This document shows, in pieces, positions 31,867 through 38,740 of a stretch of DNA of 64,000 nt. Within the stretch, counting starts at the first letter, position 1. Each line of letters opens with the position of its first letter. The translations under genes and the position numbers were made by a program. Under the pieces are notes generated by a model. That model did no database searches. It saw nothing but the letters and a program-made list of their open reading frames with translations, and was not told where the DNA came from. Origin of the DNA: Obrimoposthia wandeli (lineage: Eukaryota); assembly GCA_977020255.1 (NCBI GenBank), contig CDROCS010004085.1, forward strand, positions 248,001 to 312,000, written 5' to 3'.

Positions 31867-33039
31867 ATGAGGAAACGCAATATGAGAGCACTCTCTTTAC
31901 CTCAGGCGAGAAAGCTTGCGTTGCTTTCACAATGTATTTCAACAAGGTCGCTAAAAGGTAGTGCGTATTCAGAAACCTTAAACGTGTTTGAGCACTTAGG
32001 TTATGTGCAGATAGATACCATATCAGTCGTTCAACGCGCACATCACCATACACTTTGGAGTCGAAACCCCAGATATCAAGTTGCTCACCTTGATCAGCTC
32101 GTTGCAGACAAAAAGGTATTTGAGTATTGGTCGCATGCTGCCTCTTATCTGCCAATGAGGGACTACCGATTCAGTCTACCTCGCAAGACGGCGCTTAAAT
32201 TGGGCCAACAAAACCATTGGTTTAAGAAAGATCACAAACTGATGGCTGATGTGCTTAAGCGAATAGAGAGTGAAGGCCCATTAATGGCGAAAGACTTTGT
32301 CTCTAAAAGTCATAAAACGAATGGCTGGGGCAGTAAGCCAACTAAACAAGCCTTAGAAACGTTATTTATGCAGGGGGATCTCATGATCGCTGAGCGTAAA
32401 AATTTTCATAAGGTTTATGATTTAACGCAGCGAGTATTACCAAATGATGTAGATGCCTCAATACCTACAGAGCAAGAACATGGGCAATTTTTAGTATTGA
32501 GTTACTTAAGATCTCATGGCTTCGGAAATCTAGCTGAAATCACTTACCTGCTTAAAAATGTTAAAGCTCTGGCTAGCCAAGCGTTGAATGTGTTGCTTGA
32601 AAGTGGCGATATCAAAACAGTCATCATTAATGAGTCTGTTTATTTTGCTTGCTGTGATGCTTTGCTTCTACTCGACAAGCGACTAAATAAAAAACAAGTT
32701 CATATTCTTTCCCCATTCGATAACTTGCTCATCCAGCGAAAGCGAACACAGTCTATTTTTAACTTTAAATATTTTCTTGAATGCTATGTTCCTGCAGCCA
32801 AGCGTCAGTTTGGCTATTTTTGCTTACCGATTTTGTGGGATGGGAAGTTAGTTGCGAGGGCAGATTGTAAGGTCGATAGACAAATCAATACACTCAATGT
32901 GATTCACTTATTCATTGAACCTTCAGTGAATGAAAAAGAAACATTTATTATCGCGTTAGAGGAAAAACTTCAGAAGTTTTCACAGTTTAACCAATGTAGT
33001 CATTATTCTATCCAGAAAGTATCTTCCCACACTGTTTAA
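31867..33039 (+). CDS. ycaQ: YcaQ/AlkZ-family winged-helix DNA glycosylase
   Basis: VQIDTISVV (Q-phi-D), FEYWSH, LSPFDNL, LECYVP, RQFGYFCLPILW. Confidence 0.85.
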   Translation: MRKRNMRALSLPQARKLALLSQCISTRSLKGSAYSETLNVFEHLGYVQIDTISVVQRAHHHTLWSRNPRYQVAHLDQLVADKKVFEYWSHAASYLPMRDYRFSLPRKTALKLGQQNHWFKKDHKLMADVLKRIESEGPLMAKDFVSKSHKTNGWGSKPTKQALETLFMQGDLMIAERKNFHKVYDLTQRVLPNDVDASIPTEQEHGQFLVLSYLRSHGFGNLAEITYLLKNVKALASQALNVLLESGDIKTVIINESVYFACCDALLLLDKRLNKKQVHILSPFDNLLIQRKRTQSIFNFKYFLECYVPAAKRQFGYFCLPILWDGKLVARADCKVDRQINTLNVIHLFIEPSVNEKETFIIALEEKLQKFSQFNQCSHYSIQKVSSHTV

Positions 33040-33619
33040 AGTTATTTACCCATGTATTCCCAAATACCTCCTCAACGTATTTGTATTATCGATCGGCGAA
33101 CCCGCTTCTGCCCCTTTGCTTGTTAACGTAATTACTTATTCACAGGCTGTTAATATTGTTTTGTGATACTAAATGTCATTTGGAGGCTATTGTAACAACT
33201 CAAGAATCGAAAAAGATCGGCAATTGAGGGTCAGTTCAAATGGCGGCCTTTGATTTAATGTGTTGTTGTAGTTCGCTTTACGGGCGAAATGGTAAATATG
33301 GCATGTATATTGCTTTGTTTAACCCAGTGGCAATGAATGGCCACATATAAAAGGTTCTTGGTATGATGTTTTTAAGAAAGATTTGCAGTGTAATGAATAA
33401 AGAAGAAAAACAATTAAAAAAACAAAAAGCTTTAAAAGAAAAATTACTATTTGCTATGTCACAATCAATTGAACGAATTGTCTTATAATATCGTGCTATA
33501 CCAGAGACCCAAAAGGCTACCCGTTGGCAGCCTTTCGAAATTCTTATTACGAGTGTTATGGTAAATCTAGCCAATATGTCTATTTATTACATAACCTAAT
33601 GTGTACAAAGTAAAAAAAA

Positions 33620-33643
33620 GCTCATTCAAATGTTTGAATGAGC
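33620..33643 (-). terminator. Intrinsic terminator on the minus strand with no assigned gene
   Basis: GCTCATTCAAA/TTTGAATGAGC 11-bp stem preceded on + by an A8 run. Confidence 0.6.
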
Positions 33644-34029
33644 CTATATAAAGTTGTACGTCTGTAATTACAGAGAATAGCACTGGTCATACCAGATGTT
33701 AAGTTTTTAGTTGAGTTTTTGATTCTTGCTTCAAAGTTCCGATGTAGATTATGTCTATTACATTAATTCGAATGCTTGATGGAGACGTTGAACAAGGCGT
33801 TAATACCATTCTCTTTTGCCCGCGATATCTCATTCCTTCTGTGTTTAATCTGGTTAATAGTTAAAAATTTTGACTGAAAATTCAGATTTGTTTTGCTTAA
33901 ATTGTTTCACTTCACACTTTCATATCTTATGAATGGTCATATAAGGCCTACTTTAATTAGGGTTATTTTTTTACATTGATCTTTATAAACAATGGCTTAT
34001 TGGTTAAATAAAAATTAATAATTTCACCA

Positions 34030-34077
34030 CATCGGTTTTTCCAATGCTTTGCATTACAGCTTTCGATTTAACTGATG
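34030..34077 (+). promoter_or_regulatory. Two candidate LysR-type T-N11-A boxes upstream of the DASS gene
   Basis: CATCGGTTTTTCCAATG (34030-34046, partial dyad) and TCGATTTAACTGA (34063-34075); the motif is weak on its own. Confidence 0.4.
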
Positions 34078-34189
34078 ATAGTCTTATCTGTAATGTTTTG
34101 GTCAAGCGTTTGGGGAATTGAAACGCCATAATAACTAGGCGGTATGCCTAGAATAATCAATGTGAAGCAAATAATAAGGAGACTGAGAG

Positions 34190-35656
34190 ATGATCGCCAT
34201 TGCAAGAAATCTCAGTAGCAAAAGTAAAACGGAAAAAATCATGTATTACCTCGGGCTACCTTTGGCCATGGTGGTACTTATGCTGTTCTATTCAATACCA
34301 ACACCGGATGGAATTACTTTTGAAGGCAAGATGTCTCTTGGGATATTCTTTTTTGCTTTAATCCTTTGGATCAGTGAGTCGCTACCTAACTATGCGACAT
34401 CAATGCTCGCCATTGCGCTGTTATCGGTGTTAGGTGGTTGGGCAGAAAAAGAGGCGCTCGGCACGTTAGGTTACGGTGTAATTTGGCTGATGGTTTCAGC
34501 GTTTATTATTACCTCCGGTATGGAAAAAAGTGGACTGGCAAAACGTATTGCCCTCGCGATCATTACGCGATTTGGTAAAACGTGGCAGTCAATTCTCATG
34601 TCTTTAATGGCGGCTAACTTTACCATCGCCTTCATTATTCCTTCGACCACGGCTCGCGCAGCCATGCTATTACCAATCGTATTGCTGATTGCCAAAGCGT
34701 ATAACGTTGAAAGTGGTAATAGGAACCTCGGTAAATTGCTTGCGATTCAAGGGCTACAAGCCAACAACATCTCTACCAGTGCCATTGTTACCGCAACCGC
34801 ACCACAAATTTTAGCGATTGGTTTACTAAAAGAATATACGGGTTCTGAAGTCTCTTGGGGTGAATGGTTTATTGCTTCTGCGCCGATTGCCATTTTGACG
34901 CTTATCGCTTCCTTCTTCATCGGCTTAATGCTGTTTAGGCCGAAAGTAGATGGTAAAGCGGGTGGTGATGAAATTAATAAAATCCAAAAGCAATATGATG
35001 ATTTGGGTAAAGTGTCACTCGATGAGAAAAAAGCCGCGGGTATTTTCTTACTAACCATTACGTTGTGGGCAACGGATAAGTGGCATCTCGATATTTTTGG
35101 CTTCCAATTTAGTTTGGTGATGGTCGCAATTATTGCAGCTTCAATGTTCTTCATGCCTTATATCGGAATCTTGACGTGGAAAGAAGCTAAAATTCCATGG
35201 AACTTGATGATATTTGCTGCCGGAGCCTACGCTTGCGGGGTATCACTGAGTGATACTGGCGTCGCAACTTGGGCGTTGAGTGGATTATTCTCTAGCCTTG
35301 GCGTGCAACACATGAGTTTCAGCATGCTCTATGGGGTGGTGATTGCGATATCCAGTTTTAGTCATTTTGTATTTACCAGTAAAACGGTACGAACCATTAT
35401 TCTTATCCCAACCTTGATTGGTTTGGCTGAAACCGCTGGTGTATCACCTCTAATGCTTGCTCTTCCTGCGGCCTTTACCATTGCCGATACCATTACTTTG
35501 CCACCGCACAGTAAAGCGAACTTGGTTTATTACAGTACTGGTTATTTCTCAGTAAATGATCAATTGATCTACGGCATTCTGACTCTGATGGCGAAATGGT
35601 GCATCTTGTTCGGCGCGTCATTTACATGGTTTGCTTATCTTGGCATTACCGCTTAA
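34190..35656 (+). CDS. DASS/SLC13-family anion transporter
   Basis: Polytopic; PSTTARAA and TSKTVR loop motifs; LPPHSKAN near the C-terminus; AAGGAG RBS. Confidence 0.88.
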   Translation: MIAIARNLSSKSKTEKIMYYLGLPLAMVVLMLFYSIPTPDGITFEGKMSLGIFFFALILWISESLPNYATSMLAIALLSVLGGWAEKEALGTLGYGVIWLMVSAFIITSGMEKSGLAKRIALAIITRFGKTWQSILMSLMAANFTIAFIIPSTTARAAMLLPIVLLIAKAYNVESGNRNLGKLLAIQGLQANNISTSAIVTATAPQILAIGLLKEYTGSEVSWGEWFIASAPIAILTLIASFFIGLMLFRPKVDGKAGGDEINKIQKQYDDLGKVSLDEKKAAGIFLLTITLWATDKWHLDIFGFQFSLVMVAIIAASMFFMPYIGILTWKEAKIPWNLMIFAAGAYACGVSLSDTGVATWALSGLFSSLGVQHMSFSMLYGVVIAISSFSHFVFTSKTVRTIILIPTLIGLAETAGVSPLMLALPAAFTIADTITLPPHSKANLVYYSTGYFSVNDQLIYGILTLMAKWCILFGASFTWFAYLGITA

Positions 35657-35672
35657 TTGGGAGGGAAACAGT

Positions 35673-36437
35673 ATGAAAAAGACAATCAAATATCTATCGG
35701 CAGGTTCTCTCATTCTCGTAGCTGCAAATATTCAAGCGACTGAACTCGGCGAGATCCTTCATTACAGTGAAAATATACAACCTGTAGATCGAGACGGAGA
35801 AATCAACGTTACGGTTACTGGTGTCACCAATGATCAAGGAGTGCTTTACCTACCAAGCTACGAAGACAGTTCGGTGAGTGCGTACTCAGCATTGAGCGGT
35901 AAATTGAAGCAAGGGCCTGAGGTGACGAGTGTTCATGGACGAGAGGTATTGGCTTATCAGTTTTCTGAACCGAATAGCGAGGTAAGACTGCAACAGACAT
36001 TATTCGTTGAGGATGTGTATAAAACAAAGAAAGCCAAAATAAAATATAGCCAGCCAGGCGGTGTAAAACGGATTTCGTATGCGTTCATGAACACTTCGCC
36101 AGTGACGATTGATACATATTCCGGTCAACTTAGCGTGCCTCAGAAAACCGAGTTGTATGGTGTTGTAACGCCTGAGCGGTCAAAAAAGAAAAAAACCTAT
36201 GAGATTAAACGAGATGGCGATTGGAAAGTGATTGAGGTTAATCGCAAGCAAGTGTCTTCAGGCGATGACGTTAAATTTAAGATCCGTACCTATTCACCAT
36301 CCCCAGCAATCAAGTGGACATTATGGTCTTTGGTGGTATTTCTATCGGGAGCGCTATTGTGGAAACGTCGTGATGTTCTCATGAATTTAGAGGCCAAACC
36401 TACGGTAGAAAAGCCACTGCGAACTAAGGAGTTATGA
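35673..36437 (+). CDS. Hypothetical exported protein with a C-terminal membrane anchor
   Basis: GGAGGG RBS then ATG 35673; signal peptide ending ANIQA; beta-rich body; TM segment IKWTLWSLVVFLSGALLW then KRR; stop overlaps the next start. Confidence 0.75.
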   Translation: MKKTIKYLSAGSLILVAANIQATELGEILHYSENIQPVDRDGEINVTVTGVTNDQGVLYLPSYEDSSVSAYSALSGKLKQGPEVTSVHGREVLAYQFSEPNSEVRLQQTLFVEDVYKTKKAKIKYSQPGGVKRISYAFMNTSPVTIDTYSGQLSVPQKTELYGVVTPERSKKKKTYEIKRDGDWKVIEVNRKQVSSGDDVKFKIRTYSPSPAIKWTLWSLVVFLSGALLWKRRDVLMNLEAKPTVEKPLRTKEL

Positions 36438-37684
36438 TGAAAAAACAAGCGTTGCTGCTTATCGCAGATGGAATGGGGGATTTACCGAATCCACAACTCG
36501 ATGGTAAAACACCATTAGAATACGCCCATACTCCGCATATGACTTATTTAGCGTCTCAAGGGCTGTTTGGTAATGTTCATCCAGTCCAAGCTGGGGTTCC
36601 TGTAGGTACGGATGTCGGTCATTTAGCCATCTTTGGTTATGATCCATATGAAGTCTATACTGGCCGAGGCCCTATAGAAGCTTATGGCGCTGAAATTGAC
36701 ATGCTGCCGGGAGATATCGCATTTCGTGGCAATTTCGCCACCGTTGATGATGAATTTATCGTATTGGATCGTCGCGCAGAGCGGATAAATGTAGGAACAC
36801 ATGATCTTGCAGAAGCCGTCGATGGAATAAGGCTTTCCAACGGTACTCAAGTGATTGCCAGAGCGCTCAGCGCGCACCGAGTGGCAGTGGTTTTACGTGG
36901 TAATGGCTTATCTGAAAAGGTTACTACGTCTGATCCTGGTACGGCGAAAGAGGGCAGTAAAGTTGTTCATTCAACACCATTGGATGATTCAGTAGATGCT
37001 CAAATGACTGCGCAGTTAATTAATGAATTGAGTGAGAAGTTTTACTCAATTTTAAGCCTGCATCCTGTTAATAGTGCTCGGAGACAAAGCAAACAAGCAC
37101 CAGCAAATATGATTTTGTTACGTGGAATAGGGAAAGAGATCCAAGCGCCTAAAGTGACGGAGAAATACGGTATTACTGGCGCTTGTATTGCCGGTGATCG
37201 AACGGTTCTCGGCATTGCCAGAATGTCAGGTTTGGATACGTTTCATCAGCCAAGCTTTACCGCAGGTTTTGATACAGATTTTTTAGGTAAGGCTAAAGTG
37301 GCCGTTGAAAAACTAAAGCAAGGGTATGATTGGGTTGTGCTGCATGTAAAAGCCCCGGATCTTGCTGGTCATGATGATTTACCACATATGAAAGTGGAAA
37401 TGGCTGAAAAGTTTGATCAGATGGTTGGCTTTATTATGGAGCATATTGATCTCGACAATTGTTACATTGGCTATACCAGCGATCATTCAACGCCATGTAT
37501 TCGTCGCGACCATTCCGGAGATCCCGTTCCTACATTTTTTGCGGGTACGGATGTACGTAAAACAGAATTGCATGGCTTTGGCGAAAAATACCTTAACCAT
37601 GGCGCACTGAATAATTTGACAGGACGGGAGTTCTTTTTCACTCAAATGGATTATCTTGGTGTCGTACCTAAATTAGGCGCTTAG
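36434..37684 (+). CDS. ApgM-like (archaeal-type cofactor-independent phosphoglycerate mutase family) alkaline-phosphatase-superfamily enzyme
   Basis: ADGMGD, GKTPLEYA.TP, GTDVGHLAIFGYDP, GRGPIEA, KAPDLAGH, SDHSTP, HSGDPVP. Confidence 0.85.
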   Translation: MMKKQALLLIADGMGDLPNPQLDGKTPLEYAHTPHMTYLASQGLFGNVHPVQAGVPVGTDVGHLAIFGYDPYEVYTGRGPIEAYGAEIDMLPGDIAFRGNFATVDDEFIVLDRRAERINVGTHDLAEAVDGIRLSNGTQVIARALSAHRVAVVLRGNGLSEKVTTSDPGTAKEGSKVVHSTPLDDSVDAQMTAQLINELSEKFYSILSLHPVNSARRQSKQAPANMILLRGIGKEIQAPKVTEKYGITGACIAGDRTVLGIARMSGLDTFHQPSFTAGFDTDFLGKAKVAVEKLKQGYDWVVLHVKAPDLAGHDDLPHMKVEMAEKFDQMVGFIMEHIDLDNCYIGYTSDHSTPCIRRDHSGDPVPTFFAGTDVRKTELHGFGEKYLNHGALNNLTGREFFFTQMDYLGVVPKLGA

Positions 37685-37750
37685 GCCAAGATATAAGATA
37701 TGAATTATGGAAAACACAGTACTTGGTTAGAGAGTGCTTGTTTTTCCTTT

Positions 37751-37787
37751 AAAGGCAGCGACAAAGTAATGTTGCTGCCTTTTTTTG
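37751..37787 (+). terminator. Intrinsic terminator
   Basis: AAAGGCAGCGAC/GTTGCTGCCTTT stem plus T-tract. Confidence 0.85.
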
Positions 37788-37804
37788 GATTCAGGGAGTA
37801 GAGA

Positions 37805-38740
37805 ATGAAGATTGAAAATTTAGAAGCATTTGTCACCATTGCAAAATTCAGAAGTTTTACTCAAGCGGCGGATACCTGTTTTTGTACCCAAGCAACCATG
37901 TCTCAACGTTTAAAAAACTTGGAAAATCACTTCAAGACTCAACTGTTAGATAGAGTAGGACGTAACATTGAGCTAACGGAAGCGGGTAGAAGAATTTTAC
38001 CTTATTGTCAATCTGCTCTTGCGGCAATCCATCAATCAAAAATTGAGTTGGAGGCAATCAATGGCCTTTCCACAGGCAGTTTATTACTTTGCAGTTCGAA
38101 TACACCTGGCATCTATATTTTGCCGCAAGTGTTAGCAGATTTTCATCTTCAATACCCGGGGGTGTTGATTGAATCTCGAATTAAATATGCGAAGGATGTA
38201 CTGCAAGAGATCTCTTTTGAAGGAGAGGCAGAGTTGGGGTTAATCTCTCAACCAAATGTCATTGATGATAAAAAATTATGTTTTGAACCGATTTTGAAAG
38301 ATCAACTCACCGTTGTTGTATCGCCAAACCACAGTAGTATCGCGAAGTGGAAAGACAAAGGTAGAATCAGTCTAAAGGATTTGCAAAAAAACAACTTACT
38401 GGTATCCAATAGCAAGAGTTCTATTTTACAAAACTTAGAGCGAGCGAGTGATACAAAAATTGATTTCAATACCACTATCGTTTTGGGCAGTATGGAAGCG
38501 GTAAAAAAGTCCGTAATGCTAAATGCGGGTATCGCGATCGTGTCTAACTTTCTTGTCGAAGAGGACGTCGCTGATGGCAAGTTAGTTTCTTTTGATATAG
38601 CCGGTGTAGAGATGCAACGAAAAATCATGTTGGTATATCGAAAAAATTGCAGTTTATCTCCTGCAGCAAAGGCATTTATTCAGACCTTAAAAGCAGATTT
38701 ATCAGACAAGTACCCCAATTTATATGTCCCTAGTCATTAA
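37805..38740 (+). CDS. LysR-family transcriptional regulator
   Basis: SFTQAA..TQATMSQRLKNLE HTH; SNTPGIYILP; EAVKKSV. Confidence 0.93.
   Translation: MKIENLEAFVTIAKFRSFTQAADTCFCTQATMSQRLKNLENHFKTQLLDRVGRNIELTEAGRRILPYCQSALAAIHQSKIELEAINGLSTGSLLLCSSNTPGIYILPQVLADFHLQYPGVLIESRIKYAKDVLQEISFEGEAELGLISQPNVIDDKKLCFEPILKDQLTVVVSPNHSSIAKWKDKGRISLKDLQKNNLLVSNSKSSILQNLERASDTKIDFNTTIVLGSMEAVKKSVMLNAGIAIVSNFLVEEDVADGKLVSFDIAGVEMQRKIMLVYRKNCSLSPAAKAFIQTLKADLSDKYPNLYVPSH

What the first reader, a model, noticed from the sequence alone, without database searches (positions are those of the whole stretch)
34030..38740. Uncharacterised uptake/catabolism system: DASS carrier + membrane-anchored periplasmic protein + Thr-nucleophile ApgM-like enzyme + LysR
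Seen: three tightly coupled genes (16-bp gap, 4-bp overlap), a terminator, then a LysR; two T-N11-A boxes upstream. The middle protein has a signal peptide, Lys-rich patches (KTKKAKIK, RSKKKK) and a C-terminal anchor, and I recognise no family. The enzyme keeps all AlkP-superfamily metal ligands but has Thr59 (GTD) where ApgM mutases typically have Ser (GSD). Established: DASS carriers move di/tricarboxylates, sulfate or phosphate and usually need no periplasmic partner; Thr nucleophiles occur in phosphopentomutase and phosphonoacetate hydrolase; Vibrionaceae normally use GpmM/GpmA for glycolysis. Inference: a dedicated pathway importing and converting a phosphorylated or phosphonated organic acid, with a novel accessory subunit. 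I know of no description of this combination.
Basis: partly seen in the sequence, partly recalled or inferred. Interest (0 to 1): 0.72.

Follow-up and report, generated by a model that had tools for sequence, protein, structure and literature searches.

The report
Conserved phospho-anion uptake gene cassette
A four-gene unit (exchanger-type DASS carrier, an unnamed membrane-anchored outer-face protein, an archaeal-type phosphoglycerate-mutase-like enzyme and a LysR regulator) is real, kept together in bacteria of at least two named phyla and many unassigned metagenome contigs, has not been described, and most likely imports and converts a phosphate-bearing acid such as phosphoglycerate.

Summary
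DASS (34190-35656), a 254-aa signal-peptide/C-terminal-anchor protein ("MID", 35673-36437), an ApgM-family enzyme with Thr59 (36434-37684), a terminator and a LysR gene (37805-38740) lie exactly as described.

The four genes sit in the same order in 10 Vibrionaceae genomes of six genera, with unrelated flanks. The same set, with LysR usually divergent, recurs in Clostridium, a Rhodospirillales MAG and dozens of metagenome contigs.

Three corrections:
- **Thr nucleophile:** it is the rule for a large bacterial ApgM clade, not special to this locus. One Thr-type member sits beside a 2-phosphoglycerate kinase homologue. The conserved charged residues match archaeal mutases, so a phosphoglycerate-like substrate is likeliest.
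- **Lys-rich patches:** these are lineage-specific.
- **The carrier:** it is of the Na-independent exchanger type, with extra Lys/Arg at the substrate hairpin.

MID has no Pfam family and a ribophorin-I/Ost1-like fold. Its distant relatives sit beside this DASS subfamily or a PiT carrier in CYTH/PhoU/phosphate-porin clusters, which ties it to phosphate-type anions.

The substrate is inferred, not shown. No description was found in the literature searched.

The parts
34043..34075 (+). Conserved upstream block (partial dyad AATGC-N3-GCATT followed by CTTTCGATTTAAC). Candidate LysR operator, about 115-150 nt before the start codon.
   Evidence: Alignment of 8 Vibrionaceae promoter regions. Binding was not tested.
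34052..34095 (+). 8-bp perfect inverted repeat CATTACAG / CTGTAATG with 28 nt between the arms.
   Evidence: Only partly conserved outside close relatives.
34176..34181 (+). AAGGAG ribosome-binding site of the DASS gene.
   Evidence: Sequence. GGAG is invariant in the 8 aligned promoters.
34190..35656 (+). DASS carrier, 488 aa, of the exchanger (DASS-E) type. Invariant subfamily motifs: VPSTTARA, SH..FTSK[TN]VR, ITLPPHSK.N.
   Evidence: Family scores. Best solved relatives are chloroplast DiT2.1/DiT1 and LaINDY. Motifs are invariant in 62 cassette carriers. Exchanger hallmark from PMC7553777.
35673..36437 (+). MID, 254 aa: signal peptide, one ~185-residue beta-sandwich ectodomain, a C-terminal transmembrane helix and a KRRD tail. 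Unnamed family.
   Evidence: No Pfam, NCBIfam or PDB sequence match. Model pLDDT 79. Fold resembles Ost1/ribophorin I (Z 12.9 and 11.8) and the N-domain of M1 aminopeptidases. 241 cluster representatives in 1.84 billion.
36434..37684 (+). ApgM-family binuclear metalloenzyme, 416 aa, with Thr59 at the nucleophile position.
37751..37792 (+). Intrinsic-terminator-like hairpin (13-bp stem) plus T run.
   Evidence: RNA-library contigs cross it, so read-through is possible.
37805..38740 (+). LysR-type regulator, 311 aa, of the same LysR subgroup as the regulators of all other cassettes.
   Evidence: Ten cassette LysRs all hit NF040786 best, at 178-217 bits, below the cut-off of 250.

Best explanation
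This is a LysR-controlled uptake-and-entry module for an external phosphoglycerate-type anion (3- or 2-phosphoglycerate, perhaps phosphoenolpyruvate).

1. The DASS protein is a sodium-independent exchanger. Its substrate hairpin carries an extra Lys and an Arg, which suits a phosphate-plus-carboxylate anion. It probably swaps the external phospho-acid for internal phosphate or a product.
2. MID is a single-pass protein with a ribophorin-I-like beta-sandwich on the outer face of the membrane. It works with the carrier as a non-catalytic partner, either capturing substrate or stabilising the carrier.
3. The cytoplasmic ApgM-type enzyme passes the phosphate through phospho-Thr59 on its two-metal centre. 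It interconverts the 3- and 2-phospho forms so the carbon enters lower glycolysis.
4. LysR switches the operon on with the substrate or a product.

**Shown:** gene order, coupling, co-conservation, family and motif assignments, fold, and the presence of a separate housekeeping GpmI.

**Inferred:** the substrate, the exchange mode, physical contact between DASS and MID, and the LysR effector.
For: - **Conserved cassette:** present in 10 of 10 Vibrionaceae loci, in Clostridium, a Rhodospirillales MAG and unassigned assemblies, and in most metagenome loci with at least 47% identity.
- **Tree:** a 33-row clade (support 99) is almost entirely DASS+MID+LysR-linked.
- **The enzyme looks like a real mutase:** it scores 3.9e-94 against the P. 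horikoshii enzyme 2zkt, with the Arg/His/Asp residues kept. It scores 451 bits against a cut-off of 489 on the mutase equivalog. 72 of 101 invariant positions are shared with Ser-type enzymes. A Thr-type relative lies in an operon with a 2-phosphoglycerate kinase homologue.
- **Carrier type:** the Arg of PSTTAR aligns with LaINDY Arg159. The LaINDY His392 position is Arg here, and there is an added Lys.
- **MID and this DASS subfamily recur in phosphate-acquisition clusters:** CYTH, PhoU_div, PHO4, phosphate porin, phytase-like. One cassette uses an RpiR/SIS regulator.
- **Expression hint:** RNA-library contigs of close relatives lie on all four genes and bridge the gene junctions.
Against: - All carriers tested already have GpmI, so a second plain mutase looks redundant.
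- About half of the non-Vibrio cassettes add a further metal hydrolase: beta-CASP MBL, HD, MBL or AP_endonuclease-2 fold. This hints at a diester or doubly phosphorylated substrate.
- No DASS is known to me to carry organophosphates in bacteria.
- MID is missing in some cassettes (L017, L063, L084-87), so it is not essential everywhere.
- The RNA evidence comes from contigs, and DNA carry-over is not excluded.
- No experiment exists.
Confidence: 0.38

Rival explanations
1. The architecture is the same, but the substrate is a doubly phosphorylated or otherwise different phospho-acid. Candidates are 2,3-bisphosphoglycerate, cyclic 2,3-diphosphoglycerate, or a phospho- or phosphono-hydroxy acid. 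The ApgM-like enzyme would then act as a phosphatase or phosphotransferase rather than a simple mutase.
For: - It explains why a second enzyme exists beside GpmI.
- It explains why unrelated phosphohydrolase folds (HD, MBL, beta-CASP, AP_endonuclease-2) take turns at the fourth position.
- The extra Lys/Arg/His in the carrier suit a highly charged anion.
- Thr-type ApgM is linked to 2-phosphoglycerate kinase, which makes 2,3-bisphosphoglycerate.
- The ApgM family includes transferases such as PhpG and a proposed homoserine kinase.
Against: - The Vibrionaceae cassette has no extra hydrolase.
- There is no active-site residue change relative to the mutases.
- There is no direct evidence for any of these compounds.
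Confidence: 0.28
2. The DASS-MID pair moves inorganic phosphate, pyrophosphate or tripolyphosphate. The ApgM-like enzyme is a phosphate-homeostasis accessory, for example adjusting phosphoglycerate pools or a phosphate store.
For: - Distant MID relatives sit in CYTH-DASS-MID-PhoU_div-PHO4-phosphate-porin clusters, and next to PHO4 without any DASS.
- A Thr-type ApgM lies next to a Na/Pi cotransporter, PhoU and Ppx.
Against: - Regulation is by LysR (or RpiR/SIS), not by a Pho-type system.
- The tight pairing with a phosphoglycerate-mutase-like enzyme is not explained.
- The carriers of the two contexts are only 41-42% identical and differ in parts of the motifs.
Confidence: 0.12
3. The carrier is an ordinary di- or tricarboxylate exchanger. 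It is co-transcribed with a spare phosphoglycerate mutase to support gluconeogenic growth on those acids, and MID has an unrelated envelope role.
For: The best solved relatives of the carrier are dicarboxylate exchangers: DiT1, DiT2.1 and LaINDY.
Against: - Similarity to those carriers is low (about 100 bits).
- The clade-specific basic residues lie at the binding hairpin.
- MID follows this DASS subfamily even where ApgM is absent.
- The recurring neighbours are phosphate-related.
Confidence: 0.08

Closest known systems
DASS exchangers (DASS-E): LaINDY, CitT, TtdT, chloroplast DiT1/DiT2
   Same: Same family, and the same Arg in the first hairpin motif that replaces the Na1 ion.
   Different: The hairpin-2 motif is TSKTVR rather than ASGTAH/ASQTGH, so it has an extra Lys and an Arg in place of His. 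It has a further HSK motif. It has a dedicated single-pass partner gene and is paired with a phospho-enzyme rather than with carboxylate metabolism.
Archaeal cofactor-independent phosphoglycerate mutase ApgM (PDB 2zkt, 3idd, 3kd8)
   Same: Full-length similarity, the same metal-ligand and Arg-rich motifs, and above the TIGR00306 cut-off.
   Different: Thr replaces Ser at the nucleophile. It scores below the mutase equivalog cut-off (451 vs 489). It is an accessory enzyme beside GpmI and belongs to a bacterial clade linked to a transporter.
PgtP phosphoglycerate transport system of Salmonella (from my own knowledge, not tested here)
   Same: Proposed physiological role: inducible uptake of 3PG, 2PG or PEP by anion exchange.
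   Different: PgtP is an MFS organophosphate:phosphate antiporter with a two-component PgtABC control system and no dedicated mutase. No sequence relation.
Binding-protein-dependent secondary carriers (TRAP, TTT) (from my own knowledge)
   Same: Concept: a secondary carrier with an extracytoplasmic partner encoded next to it.
   Different: MID is not a DctP- or TctC-type two-lobe binding protein. It is a membrane-anchored beta-sandwich, and ligand binding by MID is unproven.
Ost1 / ribophorin I of oligosaccharyltransferase
   Same: A beta-sandwich on the non-cytoplasmic side followed by one C-terminal transmembrane helix. Best structural match, Z 12.9 and 11.8.
   Different: About 10% identity, no Pfam Ribophorin_I match, and a different partner and process.

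Membership tests
DASS (TIGR00785 / PF00939) | Score above the curated cut-offs over the full length | tested here: met
   236.6 bits (cut-off 198.6) and 248.8 bits (cut-off 27).
DASS-E exchanger subgroup | Arg at the Na1 position (LaINDY Arg159) | tested here: met
   IPSTTAR aligns with LaINDY IPSNSAR. Invariant in 62 cassette carriers. Hallmark taken from PMC7553777.
DASS-E exchanger subgroup | His at the Na2 position (LaINDY His392) | tested here: not met
   The aligned residue is Arg (FTSKTVR against FFASGTAH). It is still a cationic side chain, so a Na surrogate remains plausible.
ApgM subfamily (TIGR00306) | Score above the cut-off | tested here: met
   398.6 bits against 320.
Phosphoglycerate mutase equivalog NF003104 | Score above the equivalog cut-off | tested here: not met
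   451 bits against 489.
Phosphoglycerate mutase (ApgM type) | Ser nucleophile in the GSD motif | tested here: not met
   Thr59 in GTD. Thr is the rule in the bacterial clade.
Phosphoglycerate mutase (ApgM type) | Binuclear metal ligands (Asp12, Asp309/His313, Asp350/His351, His360) | tested here: met
   Invariant in alignment A3 and aligned with 2zkt.
Phosphoglycerate mutase (ApgM type) | 3PG/2PG interconversion activity | not testable with these tools
   Needs an enzyme assay.
LysR-type regulators | HTH_1 plus LysR_substrate domains | tested here: met
   70.5 and 127.6 bits.
Selenium-metabolism-associated LysR (NF040786) | Score above 250 bits | tested here: not met
   205.1 bits here, and 178-217 bits for ten other cassette regulators.
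Ribophorin I (PF04597) | Sequence match to the family model | tested here: not met
   None of 18 members matched, even at E up to 1. The resemblance is in fold only.
TRAP/TTT-type binding-protein-dependent carriers | Partner of the DctP or TctC binding-protein fold | tested here: not met
   MID is an all-beta sandwich with a membrane anchor.

The most novel reading that the evidence does not exclude
MID founds a new class of extracytoplasmic, single-pass partner subunits for phosphate-type anion carriers. It accompanies a distinct DASS subfamily, and in one lineage a PiT carrier. If it hands anionic substrate to the carrier, this DASS-MID pair would be a third kind of binding-protein-assisted secondary transporter, and the cassette would be a previously unrecognised bacterial route for taking up phosphoglycerate-type organophosphates.
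Probability: 0.3. Interest if true: 0.8.

Novelty: new variant of a known kind. Interest (0 to 1): 0.6.

Why it matters
DASS carriers are regarded as self-sufficient di/tricarboxylate or sulfate carriers. Here a subfamily has phosphate-suited binding residues and a conserved partner protein with no named family. It is locked to an accessory phosphoglycerate-mutase-like enzyme in marine vibrios, gut and soil clostridia and other bacteria. This points to an unstudied way of using external phospho-acids. It also gives a concrete, testable function to an unnamed protein family and to the 'second' ApgM-type mutases that bacterial genomes annotate routinely.

Tried and rejected
- **Literature:** searches for the combination or its parts found nothing relevant.
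- **Leader RNA:** no riboswitch or other Rfam family in the leader. There is only a sub-threshold VrrA-like hit at 33612-33693.
- **Plasmids:** no plasmid-borne copy of MID.
- **Composition:** the cassette is only slightly richer in G+C (0.43-0.45) than its flanks (0.38-0.40), which is not a clear island signal.
- **Selenium link:** the LysR's best match suggested one, but every cassette regulator scores below that family's cut-off.
- **Lys-rich patches as a family-wide polyanion site:** rejected. Across phyla, G56, N140, I146 and P156 are the most conserved ectodomain positions, and the others at 80% or more are Y116, Y149 and E160; no His, Asp or Cys is conserved. The lysine runs are not conserved.
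- **Thr59 as a marker of new chemistry:** rejected.
- **Extra paralogue cassettes in the Clostridium genome:** the weak extra hits were 406-aa proteins that match none of the cassette proteins.
- **The recurring MBL neighbours:** they belong to different MBL subfamilies, so no single named enzyme could be assigned.
- **Solute-binding protein in L025:** the cassette variant that uses an ABC importer gave only weak iron-binding-protein similarity.
- **Genome handles:** the genomes of L105, L107, L109 and L110 are not held, so their groups could not be surveyed.
Full report
**Setting.** The window is a bacterial contig inside a 1.35-Gb, eukaryote-sized assembly. Its proteins are 97-98% identical to those of Photobacterium sagamiensis and of a metagenome contig. 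It is therefore a Photobacterium-like associate or contaminant. The reads tool was given 4,711 letters.

**Observation.**
- One search gives DASS at 34190-35656, the middle gene at 35673-36437 (16-nt gap), the ApgM-like gene at 36434-37684 (4-nt overlap) and LysR at 37805-38740.
- One search gives a 13-bp-stem terminator at 37751-37782.
- Family scans confirm DASS, ApgM (TIGR00306 398.6 bits against 320; mutase equivalog NF003104 451 against 489) and LysR. They find nothing for the middle protein.
- One search shows Thr59 where the solved archaeal enzymes have Ser, with all metal-ligand motifs kept.

**Co-conservation.**
- The middle protein (MID) has 16 close clusters, all from Vibrionaceae or unnamed.
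- Ten genome loci from Photobacterium, a Vibrio MAG, Aliivibrio, Enterovibrio, Grimontia and Veronia all have DASS-MID-ApgM-LysR in the same order. The flanks are unrelated.
- Identities are 83-97% for DASS, 70-97% for ApgM, 59-94% for LysR and 49-83% for MID.
- The cassette is sporadic. MID was found in 12 of 401 Vibrionaceae species, 0 of 400 other Pseudomonadota and 3 of 401 Bacillota sampled.
- The nearest ApgM relatives outside Vibrionaceae include Clostridium, a Rhodospirillales MAG and an unassigned assembly. Each shows LysR / DASS / ~240-aa family-less protein / ApgM. Those middle proteins are homologous to MID at 27-34% identity.
- A metagenome scan gave 80 loci. Nearly every locus with at least 47% identity and enough flank has the set. 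ORF-caller misses in L040 and L058 were resolved.
- On a tree, a 33-row clade (support 99) is almost wholly cassette-linked.
- Variants exist:
  - DASS directly abutting ApgM without MID (L017, L056, L063, L064, L084-87).
  - A small ORF in place of MID (L070-79).
  - An ABC importer in place of DASS (L025).
  - An RpiR/SIS regulator in place of LysR (L105).
- A fourth gene is frequent and is always a metal-dependent phosphohydrolase-type fold, though not the same one each time. It is beta-CASP MBL, HD, plain MBL or AP_endonuclease-2. The Vibrionaceae version lacks it.

**The enzyme.**
- All 120 best homologues have G-T-D. So do Thr-type enzymes outside the cassette.
- These other enzymes sit with a CBS-pair gene. 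In L077 they also sit with a 2-phosphoglycerate kinase homologue (NF003259, 334 bits). In L051 they sit with a Na/Pi cotransporter, PhoU and Ppx.
- Of 101 positions at least 95% conserved in the cassette clade, 72 are also kept in non-cassette Thr-type and Ser-type enzymes. No charged residue is replaced.
- Thr is therefore a clade trait, and the chemistry is probably that of a phosphoglycerate mutase.
- All five carrier genomes tested also encode a canonical GpmI above 720 bits. None has a GpmA above cut-off. The enzyme is therefore an extra one.

**The carrier.**
- Its best solved relatives are the exchangers DiT2.1, DiT1 and LaINDY.
- The Arg of PSTTAR aligns with LaINDY Arg159, the Na1 surrogate that marks exchangers (PMC7553777).
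- At the second hairpin the motif is TSKTVR. It has Arg at the His392 position and an added Lys at the tip. A further HSK motif follows.
- All three motifs are invariant in 62 cassette carriers. This is what one would expect for a more highly charged, phosphate-bearing anion (inference).

**MID.**
- The model (pLDDT 79) shows a signal peptide, one beta-sandwich ectodomain and a C-terminal helix followed by KRRD.
- The best structural matches are Ost1/ribophorin I (Foldseek E 3.5e-6; VIA Z 12.9 and 11.8) and the N-domain of M1 aminopeptidases at Z 10-11. Atlas neighbours are unnamed bacterial clusters.
- No Pfam or PDB sequence match appears even with a profile of 18 members.
- An exhaustive profile search finds 241 cluster representatives, almost all stand-alone proteins of 230-270 aa.
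- Across phyla, G56, N140, I146 and P156 are the most conserved ectodomain positions. Y116, Y149 and E160 are also kept at 80% or more. The lysine runs are lineage-specific. No conserved His, Asp or Cys suggests catalysis, so a non-enzymatic partner role is likeliest.
- Distant members are again next to a carrier:
  - CYTH-DASS-MID-PhoU_div-PHO4-phosphate porin-phytase-like (L106, L107).
  - DASS-MID-phosphonate-type binding protein-sensor kinase (L109).
  - CYTH-MID-PHO4 without DASS (L110).
- The DASS of L106 and L107 keeps SH..FTSKT.R.
- MID and this DASS subfamily are thus tied to phosphate-type anion handling.

**Regulation and expression.**
- Eight Vibrionaceae promoters share a block at 34043-34075. 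An 8-bp inverted repeat lies at 34052-34095.
- Ten cassette LysRs belong to one subgroup, with best hit NF040786 always below cut-off.
- Contigs from three marine-sediment RNA libraries match all four genes at 95-99% identity. They bridge the DASS/MID, MID/ApgM and ApgM/LysR junctions. This is compatible with co-transcription and terminator read-through. However, contigs cannot prove a single transcript, and DNA carry-over is possible.

**Reading.**
- The unit is most likely an inducible uptake-and-entry route for a phosphoglycerate-type anion. The main alternative is a doubly phosphorylated or related phospho-acid.
- Inorganic (poly)phosphate and ordinary dicarboxylates are less likely.
- The substrate, the exchange partner, DASS-MID contact and the LysR effector are all inferred.
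- I found no description of the cassette, of MID, or of a partner subunit for any DASS in the papers searched.

Noticed in passing
whole window (G000:C4085): The assembly is 1.35 Gb in 6,912 contigs, but this contig is bacterial (Photobacterium-like, 97-98% protein identity to P. sagamiensis and to a metagenome contig). It is a symbiont, associate or contaminant contig in a eukaryote assembly.
   Followed up: partly
window 33612-33693 (-): Sub-threshold VrrA-like Rfam hit (28.4 bits, gathering score 50). It overlaps a terminator-like hairpin at 33645-33618 in the 1.1-kb AT-rich spacer upstream of the cassette. Possibly a small RNA.
   Followed up: no
L077:6516-10724: A metagenome operon with a 2-phosphoglycerate kinase homologue (ATP-cone plus P-loop; NF003259 334 bits), a 441-aa family-less protein, a Thr-type ApgM and a CBS pair. 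Candidate bacterial route to 2,3-bisphosphoglycerate or a related solute.
   Followed up: partly
L106:2333-10723, L107:2355-10741, L110:3590-8276: Phosphate-acquisition clusters that hold a MID relative: 194-202-aa unknown, CYTH, (DASS), MID, PhoU_div, PHO4, phosphate-selective porin, LTD, phytase-like. In L110 the MID relative abuts PHO4 with no DASS.
   Followed up: partly
L051:6309-10715: A Thr-type ApgM downstream of a Na/Pi cotransporter, PhoU and Ppx/GppA, and followed by a CBS pair. This is a second link between this enzyme clade and phosphate homeostasis.
   Followed up: no
L009 (Enterovibrio MAG) and L021 (G447): The DASS gene of L009 is split into two ORFs, and the MID match of L021 contains one TAA. 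These are possible pseudogenes or assembly errors in those copies.
   Followed up: no
window 31867-33039 (+): AlkZ-like DNA glycosylase gene (PF06224, 245 bits) immediately upstream. It is not conserved next to the cassette in other genomes.
   Followed up: no
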